Below are positions 46,043 through 46,491 of a stretch of DNA of 64,000 nt, in pieces. The notes under the pieces were generated by a model that was not told the DNA's origin, searched no databases, and saw only the letters and a list, made by a program, of their open reading frames with translations. A program made the position numbers and the translations under genes. Positions within the stretch are counted from its first letter, which is position 1; every line of letters begins with the position of its first letter. The DNA is from Octopus bimaculoides (taxonomy: Eukaryota): positions 63,292,830 through 63,356,829 of the forward strand of contig NC_068989.1 in assembly GCF_001194135.2 (NCBI RefSeq), written 5' to 3'.

Positions 46043-46491
46043 TTTCTGTATTGCCCACAAGGGGCTAAACATAGAGGGGACAAACAAGGACAGACAAAGG
46101 GATAAAGTCGATTACATCGACCCCAGTGCGTAACTGGTACTTAATTTATCGACCCCGAAAGGATGAAAGGCAAGGTCGACCTCGGCGGAATTTGAACTCA
46201 GAACGTAACGGCAGACGAAATGCCTATTTCTTTACTAACATAAAGTCAGAGGAAATACCTATTTCGTTATTGCCCACAAGGGGCTAAACATAGAGGGAAC
46301 AAACAAGAACAGACGAATGGATTAAGTCGATTGCATCGACCCCAGTGCGTAACTGGTACTTAATTTATCGACCCCGAAAGGATGAAAGGCAAAGTCGACC
46401 TCGGCGGAATTTGAACTCAGAACGTAACGGCAGACGAAATACCGCTAAGCATTTCGCCCGGCTTGCTAACGTTTCTGCCAGCTCGCCGCCT
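46043..46491 (-). mobile_element. SINE family A, tail type B, three-unit tandem with 16-bp TSD
   Basis: Full unit 46260-46491, 35-bp mini unit 46225-46259, headless unit 46043-46224. TATTCTTTGCTTCTTA occurs at 46027-46042 and 46492-46507. Confidence 0.9.

What the first reader, a model, noticed from the sequence alone, without database searches (positions are those of the whole stretch)
46050..46084. SINE tail B is homologous to the 3' end of the Tx1-type LINE: a candidate SINE-LINE partnership
Seen: SINE 46050-46084 ATTGCCCACAAGGGGCTAAACATAGAGGGGACAAA versus LINE 63919-63953 ATTAGCCACACAGGGCTCAACGAAGATGGGACAAA gives 27/35 ungapped identities, counted by hand. LINE copy 1 shares AACATAGAGGG exactly. 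Both are the terminal segment of their element, in the same orientation, and both fold a small stem-loop. Established: SINEs often borrow 3' ends from CR1/L2/RTE partners, whereas mammalian L1 partners rely on poly(A). Inference: a stringent-type L1/Tx1 partner for an abundant octopus SINE. Caveat: this SINE insertion is not in a GATA array, so either the TATC is a LINE tail or a non-specific relative mobilises the SINE.
Basis: partly seen in the sequence, partly recalled or inferred. Interest (0 to 1): 0.8.

Follow-up and report, generated by a model that had tools for sequence, protein, structure and literature searches.

The report
Octopus SINE tail matches LINE end
The last ~45-57 bases of a short cephalopod retroposon (SINE) are a real relative of the last bases of an L1-type LINE in the same window. 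This is the usual sign that a SINE borrows a LINE's copying machinery, but the window alone cannot show that this LINE family is the one that moves it.

Summary
SINE 46050-46084 and LINE 63919-63953 share 27/35 ungapped bases. Across both strands of the window, the three best non-SINE matches to that 35-mer are the three LINE 3' ends (27, 22, 22). Only 1 of 1000 dinucleotide shuffles reaches 27 anywhere. The SINE tail is as close to each LINE copy (27, 23, 23 of 35) as the LINE copies are to each other (26, 24, 22). It matches the LINE majority consensus at 26/31 defined positions. Both blocks lie on the minus strand, 9-10 nt from their element's 3' terminus.

The LINE belongs to the L1 superfamily, and all three 3' ends abut (TATC)n. 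Placement in Tx1 rather than L1 could not be tested.

Weaknesses:
- The two tail-B SINE copies are one insertion, a dimer inside a single perfect 16-bp target-site duplication.
- That insertion is not in a GATA array, and the SINE lacks the LINE's terminal (TATC)n.
- The stem-loop is 4 bp, no better than shuffles, and not conserved.
- The LINE copies are old and degenerate.
- No further octopus DNA could be retrieved.

Verdict: homology is well supported and partnership with this LINE lineage is plausible but unproven. It is a candidate new member of a known kind. L1-tailed SINEs are rare: three were known by 2013, all from plants or algae.

The parts
46043..46100 (-). Tail B of SINE copy S1. 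This is the 3'-terminal block homologous to the LINE 3' end. The element ends ...GGGCAATACAGAAA at 46043.
   Evidence: 27/35 to LINE c3. Window-wide top hits are the LINE tails. SW z = 8.6, 4.6 and 2.4 against c3, c2 and c1. Alignments.
46043..46223 (-). SINE copy S1, 5'-truncated. It starts inside the head, just upstream of the B-box-like GAGTTCAAATTCC, and is the downstream unit of a dimer.
   Evidence: 95% identical to S2 over 181 nt. Sequence.
46224..46261 (-). Spacer of about 36-38 nt between S2 and S1 (TAGGTATTTCCTCTGACTTTATGTTAGTAAAGAAATAG). Its origin is unknown.
   Evidence: Read directly. No match elsewhere in the window.
46262..46491 (-). SINE copy S2, full length (about 230 nt). 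It has a head with A-box-like GAGCTGGCAGAA and B-box-like GAGTTCAAATTCC, a core shared with eight older copies, and tail B at 46262-46319.
   Evidence: sequence. (alignment with eight other copies that start at the same AAGGCGGYGAGCTGGCAGAA). tRNA models do not score on it.
46492..46507 (-). Upstream copy of the target-site duplication TAAGAAGCAAAGAATA (14-16 bp, depending on how the SINE end is drawn).
   Evidence: Perfect 16/16 repeat of 46027-46042, read. It brackets S2 + spacer + S1 as one insertion.
46027..46042 (-). Downstream copy of the target-site duplication. It follows the SINE 3' end directly, with no (TATC)n.
63909..64000 (-). LINE copy c3. Only the last ~92 nt of its 3' UTR lie in the window. 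The 3' terminus is ...GGCTAATAAAAGAAATG at 63909.
   Evidence: 79% identical to c2 and c1 tails. Best match to the SINE tail.
63846..63908 (+). Imperfect (GATA)n array, which reads (TATC)n on the LINE's strand, directly after the 3' end of c3.
8791..9285 (-). LINE copy c2, 5'-truncated. ORF2 C-terminus at about 9285-9096 ending in a stop codon, then a ~300-nt 3' UTR, then the tail block at 8791-8850.
   Evidence: tblastn to the C-termini of L1-like ORF2 proteins (P0186 at 1.5e-8, P0184 at 3e-8). Translation. Tail alignment. This copy shows that the tail is contiguous with the LINE coding region.
8746..8790 (+). Degenerate (GATA)n array between the c2 3' end and the c1 5' end.
6902..8745 (-). 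LINE copy c1, 5'-truncated. Degenerate ORF2 post-RT region at 8745-7865 (stops and frameshifts), assembly gap at 7131-7864, 3' UTR at 7130-6902 with the tail block at 6902-6960.
   Evidence: Six-frame translation. tblastn hits at 8296-8748 to L1-like ORF2 proteins. 77% nt identity to contig L001. Tail.
6826..6901 (+). Perfect (GATA)19 array directly after the 3' end of c1.

Best explanation
Tail B is a copy of the 3' end of an L1-superfamily LINE lineage, grafted onto an older octopus tRNA-type SINE body that otherwise carries a different tail (tail A).

Proposed mechanism:
- Pol III transcribes the SINE from its internal A/B-box-like head.
- The RNA's last ~45-57 nt mimic the LINE's 3' UTR end.
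- The reverse transcriptase of a LINE of this lineage accepts the SINE RNA as template and copies it into a nicked chromosomal site by target-primed reverse transcription. This leaves a 14-16-bp target-site duplication.

Shown here: the homology, its terminal position and orientation, the L1-like nature of the LINE, and the target-site duplication.

Inferred: the direction of transfer (LINE to SINE), recognition of the tail by the LINE protein, and that a member of this lineage did the mobilising. The mobiliser was probably a younger relative, not tied to GATA arrays, rather than the old copies seen here.
For: (1) The match is non-random and position-specific. It is 27/35 to c3, and the top three window-wide hits of the SINE 35-mer are the three LINE 3' ends. 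1 of 1000 shuffles reaches 27. SW z-scores are 8.6, 4.6 and 2.4-3.8.
(2) The SINE tail falls inside the LINE family's own diversity. SINE-LINE identities are 27, 23 and 23 of 35; LINE-LINE identities are 26, 24 and 22. The LINE majority consensus matches the SINE at 26/31 defined positions, better than any single copy.
(3) Both blocks end 9-10 nt from the element terminus with the same ...AATA-NN-GAAA(T) ending, on the same strand sense.
(4) The tail is an integral part of the LINE. In c2 it is contiguous with the ORF2 C-terminus, stop codon and 3' UTR, and it is present in all three copies.
(5) The SINE body exists with two different tails. Eight older copies carry ...TTGCTGGCCTTGTGCCAAAATTTGAAA. 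Tail exchange onto the SINE is therefore the simpler direction of transfer.
(6) The SINE insertion has a perfect 16-bp target-site duplication starting in an A/G-rich stretch after TT(A). This is compatible with an APE-type (L1-like) nick.
(7) The size and identity of the shared block fit accepted SINE-LINE tail homologies in molluscs: 35-61 bp at 72-95% (PMC11481361).
(8) L1-Tx1 LINE families are reported as recently active in Octopus vulgaris (PMC13282606).
Against: - There is only one independent tail-B insertion event in the window, the dimer within one duplication.
- The SINE lacks the (TATC)n that follows all three LINE ends, and it is not inserted in a GATA array. Classical stringent pairs usually share the terminal repeat. 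SINEs moved by target-specific Tx1 elements share the target (PMC4494074).
- There is no significant or conserved RNA structure in the shared block.
- The LINE copies are old: 67% identity over the c1/c2 3' UTR, 79% between the tail segments of c3 and c1/c2, and several stops. The SINE insertion looks young. Overlap of activity is therefore not shown.
- Identity to the LINE consensus is about 84%, not near 100%. The true donor or partner may be another family.
- No genome-wide consensus could be built, because no other octopus DNA was reachable.
Confidence: 0.6

Rival explanations
1. The tails are homologous, but the LINE family seen in this window is not the mobiliser. The SINE is moved by a different family that carries a related 3' end. 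This could be a younger L1/Tx1 relative without (TATC)n or GATA association, or a LINE of another clade that shares the motif.
For: The SINE end has no (TATC)n and its target is not GATA. The window LINE copies are degenerate. Identity to the LINE consensus is 84%, not higher. Thirteen recently active L1-Tx1 families exist in O. vulgaris, so close relatives are likely (PMC13282606).
Against: Within the window, no other sequence resembles tail B. The next best hits after the LINE tails score 20/35, or are low-complexity. The SINE tail is as close to the LINE copies as they are to each other.
Confidence: 0.28
2. The direction is reversed, or there is a third source. Either the LINE 3' UTR picked up a fragment of the SINE, or both picked it up from another repeat, by recombination or template switching. 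The shared block then has no role in recognition.
For: No conserved structure is seen in the block. Template switching clearly happens at this locus, or in its master copy, as the dimer with a spacer shows. The LINE terminal block is not more conserved between c1 and c2 than the rest of the 3' UTR.
Against: The block is present in all three diverged LINE copies, so it is old in the LINE. The same SINE body occurs with another tail in eight older copies. The block is exactly terminal in both elements, which a random capture would not predict.
Confidence: 0.08
3. The similarity is chance resemblance of two pyrimidine/purine-biased, low-complexity ends.
For: The block is short (35-57 nt). One of 1000 shuffles did reach 27/35 somewhere in the window. 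A low-complexity ACAGACA stretch at 16704-16747 also gives a weak hit.
Against: All three LINE copies are the top three hits, in the same register and orientation and at the element termini. SW scores exceeded all 3000 shuffles for c3 and all but 5-10 for c2. Identity improves at consensus level.
Confidence: 0.04

Closest known systems
SINE/LINE pairs with a common 3' tail ('stringent' recognition: Ohshima et al. 1996; UnaSINE1/UnaL2, Kajikawa & Okada 2002; reviewed in PMC3747384)
   Same: A SINE with a Pol III-type head whose last few dozen bases match the last bases of a LINE 3' UTR in the same genome, in the same orientation and at the terminus. The block size and identity (about 45-57 nt, 77-84%) are typical; bivalve pairs span 35-61 bp at 72-95% (PMC11481361).
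   Different: Classical pairs also share the terminal short repeats and usually a conserved stem-loop. Here the SINE lacks the LINE's (TATC)n, and no conserved stem-loop is supported. Most known partners are CR1, L2, RTE or related clades, not L1.
L1-clade LINEs with SINEs that share their tails: LINE1-1_ZM with maize/sorghum SINEs, and L1-1_CR with SINEX-3_CR (Ohshima 2012, PMC3472496)
   Same: An L1-superfamily LINE whose specific 3' end sequence is also found on a SINE. This implies sequence-specific rather than poly(A)-based template choice.
   Different: Those cases are in plants and a green alga. [quoted passage not shown] Here the host is an animal (a cephalopod), the LINE ends in (TATC)n, and no such hairpin is supported.
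Tx1-Mar LINEs and SINEU in crocodilians (Kojima 2015, PMC4494074); microsatellite-targeting Tx1 elements Kibi (TC)n, Koshi (TTC)n, and crocodilian Tx1 in (TTCC)n/(TTTC)n
   Same: An L1/Tx1-group LINE associated with a microsatellite, with a SINE proposed as its dependant.
   Different: The SINEU partnership was inferred from a shared insertion target, and those elements have poly(A) tails. Here the link is a shared tail sequence, and the target is not shared in the one insertion seen. Whether (GATA)n is this LINE's target or its own 3' repeat is unresolved: of the two 5' junctions visible in the window, c1's abuts a GATA array and c2's does not (c3's lies outside the window).
Octopus tRNA-derived SINEs OK, OR1 and OR2 (Ohshima & Okada 1994, cited in PMC4824008 and PMC4758252)
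   Same: An abundant tRNA-type SINE of octopus with a head, a conserved body and variable tails.
   Different: No partner LINE for an octopus SINE is named in the papers I could read (PMC9115989, PMC13282606).

Membership tests
SINE/LINE pair with common 3' tail (stringent type) | 3'-terminal sequence of the SINE similar to the 3'-terminal sequence of the LINE, in the same orientation | tested here: met
   27/35 to c3. 26/31 defined positions to the LINE majority consensus. The top three window-wide hits are the LINE ends. z up to 8.6.
SINE/LINE pair with common 3' tail (stringent type) | The shared block belongs to the LINE proper, contiguous with ORF2 and the 3' UTR | tested here: met
   c2 has the ORF2 C-terminus, stop codon, ~300-nt UTR and tail in one piece. 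The tail is present in all three copies.
SINE/LINE pair with common 3' tail (stringent type) | The same terminal short repeats on SINE and LINE | tested here: not met
   LINE ends are followed by (TATC)n in 3 of 3 copies. The SINE ends ...CAGAAA and runs directly into its target-site duplication. Only one SINE insertion was available.
SINE/LINE pair with common 3' tail (stringent type) | A conserved stem-loop in the shared tail, with compensatory changes | tested here: not met
   Only 4-bp stems, in different registers, absent in c1. z is about 0 against shuffles. RNAalifold predicts no pairs. The LINE copies are decayed, so this is weak negative evidence.
SINE/LINE pair with common 3' tail (stringent type) | Overlapping periods of activity, and trans-mobilisation | not testable with these tools
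   This needs genome-wide copy sets and a retrotransposition assay. No further octopus DNA could be fetched.
L1 superfamily (L1/Tx1 group) LINE | ORF2 homologous to L1-type APE + RT + C-terminal zinc-knuckle proteins | tested here: met
   Window ORF2 remnants hit P0001, P0004-like and P0186-like proteins. Those carry Exo_endo_phos + RVT_1 + zf-RVT domains. P0004 aligns with human L1 ORF2p over residues 5-858 at E = 2e-73, far better than with R2. The APE and core RT parts of the window copies are themselves missing, through 5' truncation.
Tx1 clade | Phylogenetic placement of the RT within Tx1 rather than L1 proper | not testable with these tools
   No labelled Tx1 reference was available. Cluster look-ups returned no names.
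Tx1 clade | Target-specific insertion, here into (GATA)n | tested here: inconclusive
   All three 3' ends abut (TATC)n. The 5' end of c1 abuts a GATA array, but that array is the tail of c2. The 5' end of c2 is not next to GATA. The 5' end of c3 lies outside the window. The pattern is equally compatible with a LINE-made 3' repeat.
tRNA-derived SINE (SINE2) | Internal Pol III promoter (A and B boxes) in a tRNA-related head | tested here: inconclusive
   A B-box-like GAGTTCAAATTCC and an A-box-like GAGCTGGCAGAA are visible, and nine copies share the same 5' start. ARAGORN and Rfam tRNA models do not score on the head.
tRNA-derived SINE (SINE2) | Short, non-coding, dispersed in many copies, flanked by target-site duplications | tested here: met
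   About 230 nt. Ten copies or fragments in 64 kb. A perfect 16-bp duplication surrounds the tail-B dimer.

The most novel reading that the evidence does not exclude
An animal L1/Tx1-superfamily LINE uses sequence-specific ('stringent') recognition of its 3' end, and through that tail drives a young subfamily of the major octopus tRNA-type SINE. The SINE gained access by swapping its older tail A for tail B, which is partner switching. This would be the first tail-sharing L1-clade SINE partnership described in an animal, and would name a driver for part of the octopus SINE expansion.
Probability: 0.3. Interest if true: 0.6.

Novelty: new member of a known kind. Interest (0 to 1): 0.42.

Why it matters
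SINEs make up roughly a tenth of octopus genomes (11.6% in O. vulgaris, PMC13282606) and are over-represented in brain transcripts (PMC9115989). No partner LINE for them is named in the papers I could read.

SINEs with L1 tails are very rare. Three were known among 58 pairs, all in plants or algae, against more than 800 L1-clade LINE entries in the database (PMC3472496, PMC3747384). An animal case would bear on whether strict 3'-end recognition is ancestral in the L1 group and was relaxed only in some lineages such as mammals.

It would also give a concrete, testable pairing for work on octopus retrotransposition: which ORF2p moves which SINE.

Tried and rejected
**Getting more octopus DNA (failed)**
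- Protein search with the degenerate LINE ORF2 fragment gave one hit, P0001, on a 580-bp ENA metagenome contig that is 77% identical in DNA to c1.
- An exhaustive HMMER search with P0001, then a word search with P0004, found only distant L1-like proteins (33-48% aa identity to the window copy) from TARA and other metagenomes. Their 3' UTRs are unrelated to the window LINE tail.
- A six-frame 'protein' query made from the SINE tail found nothing.
- DNA pattern scans found nothing useful. The SINE tail pattern gave no hit in IMG/VR and only bare 19-mer chance hits in JGI metagenomes. The SINE core pattern gave no hit in IMG/VR or in prokaryote genomes.
- Exact look-ups of two window ORFs were not on record.

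**Naming the LINE clade from database names**
- Two cluster look-ups returned no names.

**Pfam on window ORFs and the LINE fragment**
- No families were found. The post-RT region is not covered by Pfam.

**Stem-loop support**
- Single-sequence folds and RNAalifold gave nothing above background.
- A CCGTGG...CCACGG inverted repeat further up the LINE 3' UTR is also not significant.

**Target-site duplication for LINE c2**
- None was found.

**Literature**
- Full-text searches for the SINE sequence, for Repbase-style octopus element names and for an octopus SINE partner found no prior description.
- Supplements of SINEBase and of Ohshima 2012 are not held.
- Repbase and Dfam themselves could not be consulted, so prior annotation there is not excluded.

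Full report
**What is at the coordinates**

The window looks like a cephalopod scaffold: many N runs, very microsatellite-rich, and full of SINE copies. Positions 46050-46084 lie in the 3' tail of a SINE on the minus strand.

Read in sense, a full-length copy (S2, 46491-46262) starts AAGGCGGCGAGCTGGCAGAA. It has a B-box-like GAGTTCAAATTCC and a core...TTTCGGGGTCGATAAATTAAGTACCAG.... It ends ...TTGTTCCCTCTATGTTTAGCCCCTTGTGGGCAATAACGAAA.

About 36 nt downstream sits a second, 5'-truncated copy (S1, ~46223-46043), 95% identical to S2. The unit S2-spacer-S1 is bracketed by a perfect 16-bp direct repeat, TAAGAAGCAAAGAATA (46507-46492 and 46042-46027). The two tail-B copies are therefore one insertion event. 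It was either a dimeric source element or a template switch during reverse transcription.

Eight further SINE copies in the window share the head and core at 75-81% identity. They carry a different tail (tail A)...TTGCTGGCCTTGTGCCAAAATTTGAAA.

**The LINE**

Three copies lie on the minus strand.
- **c1 (8745-6902)** has a degenerate ORF2 region downstream of the RT domain. It hits L1-like ORF2 proteins by tblastn. It then has an assembly gap and a 3' UTR.
- **c2 (~9285-8791)** holds the ORF2 C-terminus with its stop codon (tblastn E about 1e-8), a ~300-nt 3' UTR and the tail. This shows the tail is part of the LINE.
- **c3 (64000-63909)** is cut by the window end.

The copies are old. c1 and c2 are 67% identical with many indels over the 3' UTR. 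The tails are about 79% identical.

The nearest proteins in the public collections carry Exo_endo_phos + RVT_1 + zf-RVT domains. One of them, P0004, aligns with human L1 ORF2p over residues 5-858 at E = 2e-73, against about 1e-25 for R2 proteins. The LINE therefore belongs to the L1 superfamily.

I could not separate Tx1 from L1 proper. No labelled reference was reachable, and database names were absent.

All three 3' ends are followed, in the same phase, by (TATC)n, which reads (GATA)n on the plus strand. The 5' end of c1 abuts the array that is also c2's tail. The 5' end of c2 is not next to GATA. The repeat could therefore be a LINE-made 3' tail, a preferred target, or both.

**Is the similarity real?**

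Yes.
- The count of 27/35 is correct.
- I scanned both strands of the window with the SINE 35-mer, excluding the two SINE copies. The best three ungapped matches are the three LINE 3' ends (27, 22, 22), and the next best is 20. Only 1 of 1000 dinucleotide-preserving shuffles reached 27 anywhere.
- Local alignment scores of the SINE tail against each LINE tail exceed shuffles: z = 8.6 for c3, 4.6 for c2, and 2.4-3.8 for c1.
- In the 35-nt block the SINE is as close to the LINE copies (27, 23, 23) as they are to each other (26, 24, 22).
- The LINE majority consensus matches the SINE at 26 of 31 defined positions, better than any single copy.
- The similarity runs on to the terminus. The SINE reads ...GGGCAATA-NN-GAAA and the LINE reads ...GGCTAATAA-NN-GAAAT. 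With weaker similarity upstream (TCTGTCCTTGT against TCTACATTGTA), the whole shared stretch is about 45-57 nt.
- This lies within the range accepted for mollusc SINE-LINE tail homologies, 35-61 bp at 72-95% (PMC11481361).

**What does not hold up**

- **Stem-loop.** The SINE has a 4-bp stem (GCCC/GGGC). c3 has a 4-bp stem shifted by one base, c2 folds differently, and c1 has none. None is more stable than shuffles, and RNAalifold predicts no common pairs.
- **Terminal repeat and target.** The SINE ends ...CAGAAA and passes straight into its duplication. It has no (TATC)n and does not sit in a GATA array. Classical stringent pairs share the terminal repeat. SINEs driven by target-specific Tx1 elements share the target (PMC4494074).
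- **Sample size and age.** With one independent insertion, I cannot say whether this is typical of tail-B copies. The SINE insertion looks young (perfect duplication, 11-14 CpGs kept), whereas the LINE copies are decayed.

**Most likely explanation (confidence about 0.6)**

Tail B was copied from the 3' end of this L1-superfamily LINE lineage onto an existing SINE body. The SINE is, or was, mobilised by the reverse transcriptase of a member of that lineage through recognition of the shared end. Integration is by target-primed reverse transcription, leaving a 14-16-bp duplication.

The homology, position, LINE class and duplication are shown. Recognition and the identity of the mobilising family are inferred.

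The main rival (about 0.28) is that a related but different LINE family, without the GATA association, is the true partner. Reverse or third-party capture without function (about 0.08) and chance (about 0.04) are less likely.

**Comparison with what is known**

Shared SINE/LINE tails are a classical finding (Ohshima et al. 1996; PMC3747384). L1-clade partners with specific tails are the exception. [quoted passage not shown]

Tx1 elements are known to target microsatellites and to mobilise SINEU, but that link was inferred from shared targets, and those elements have poly(A) tails (PMC4494074).

In bivalves the known partners are CR1, CR1-Zenon, L2 and Nimb (PMC11481361).

The octopus papers I could read name RTE, Dong, CR1 and L1-Tx1 LINEs as active and leave most SINEs unclassified, with no partner assigned (PMC9115989, PMC13282606). 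I could not consult Repbase, Dfam or the 1994 octopus SINE paper, so prior annotation cannot be excluded.

**Verdict**

This is a candidate new member of a known kind. It is of moderate interest because of the rarity of L1-tailed SINEs and the weight of SINEs in octopus genomes. It needs the genome-wide consensus, flank and age analyses listed under next steps.

**What I could not do**

All routes to more octopus sequence failed: protein searches, a six-frame SINE query, and DNA pattern scans of viral, metagenome and prokaryote collections.

Noticed in passing
window 46027-46507 (minus strand): The two tail-B SINE copies form a head-to-tail dimer: full-length S2, a ~36-nt spacer of unknown origin, then 5'-truncated S1. 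The dimer sits inside a single perfect 16-bp target-site duplication, TAAGAAGCAAAGAATA. It is either a dimeric SINE family or an RT template switch. The units differ at about 5% of positions, so they were probably already different when inserted.
   Followed up: partly
window 5178-5285, 16307-16392, 18618-18795, 35439-35596, 44695-44785, 44875-44976, 62050-62107, 62933-63000: Eight older copies of the same SINE body (75-81% identical in the core) carry a different tail (tail A), ...TTGCTGGCCTTGTGCCAAAATTTGAAA. The SINE family has therefore used at least two tails, which suggests a change of partner LINE.
   Followed up: partly
window 419-474, 2502-2525, 6826-6901, 8746-8790, 9850-9948, 15733-15820, 23202-23217, 63846-63908: All eight (GATA)n arrays in the 64-kb window have the same orientation (GATA on the plus strand). 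Only three carry the LINE. The reason for the uniform orientation and the high density is not known.
   Followed up: no
window 22542-22680: Rfam tRNA hit (40.9 bits) that reads like a 5'-truncated tRNA-Phe (anticodon GAA). It is followed by ...GGCGGTGCTCCAGCATGGCCGCAGTCAAATGACTGAAAC. It may be the head of another SINE family or a tRNA pseudogene. ARAGORN does not call it.
   Followed up: no
window 51099-51638 (+), 14111-14452 (+), 26370-26714 (+): Other transposon remnants, identified by eye from their motifs: an intact 179-aa ORF with a GIY-YIG-like motif (Penelope-like element), a mariner-type HTH fragment, and an integrase-like fragment. Pfam gave no hit for the 179-aa ORF; the other two were not run.
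   Followed up: no
L001 (ENA ERZ23872315, NODE_308477, 580 bp): A metagenome contig carries an intact 149-aa RT fragment that is 77% identical in DNA to LINE copy c1. That sample therefore contains DNA of a cephalopod or other relative with a better-preserved member of this LINE lineage.
   Followed up: partly
window 7065-7105 and 9000-9040 (minus strand, LINE 3' UTR about 200 nt from the end): The best-conserved part of the LINE 3' UTR between c1 and c2 contains an inverted repeat, CCGTGG...CCACGG. In c1 it reads TCGTGG, which keeps a G-U pair. It is not significant against shuffles. It lies outside the block shared with the SINE.
   Followed up: partly
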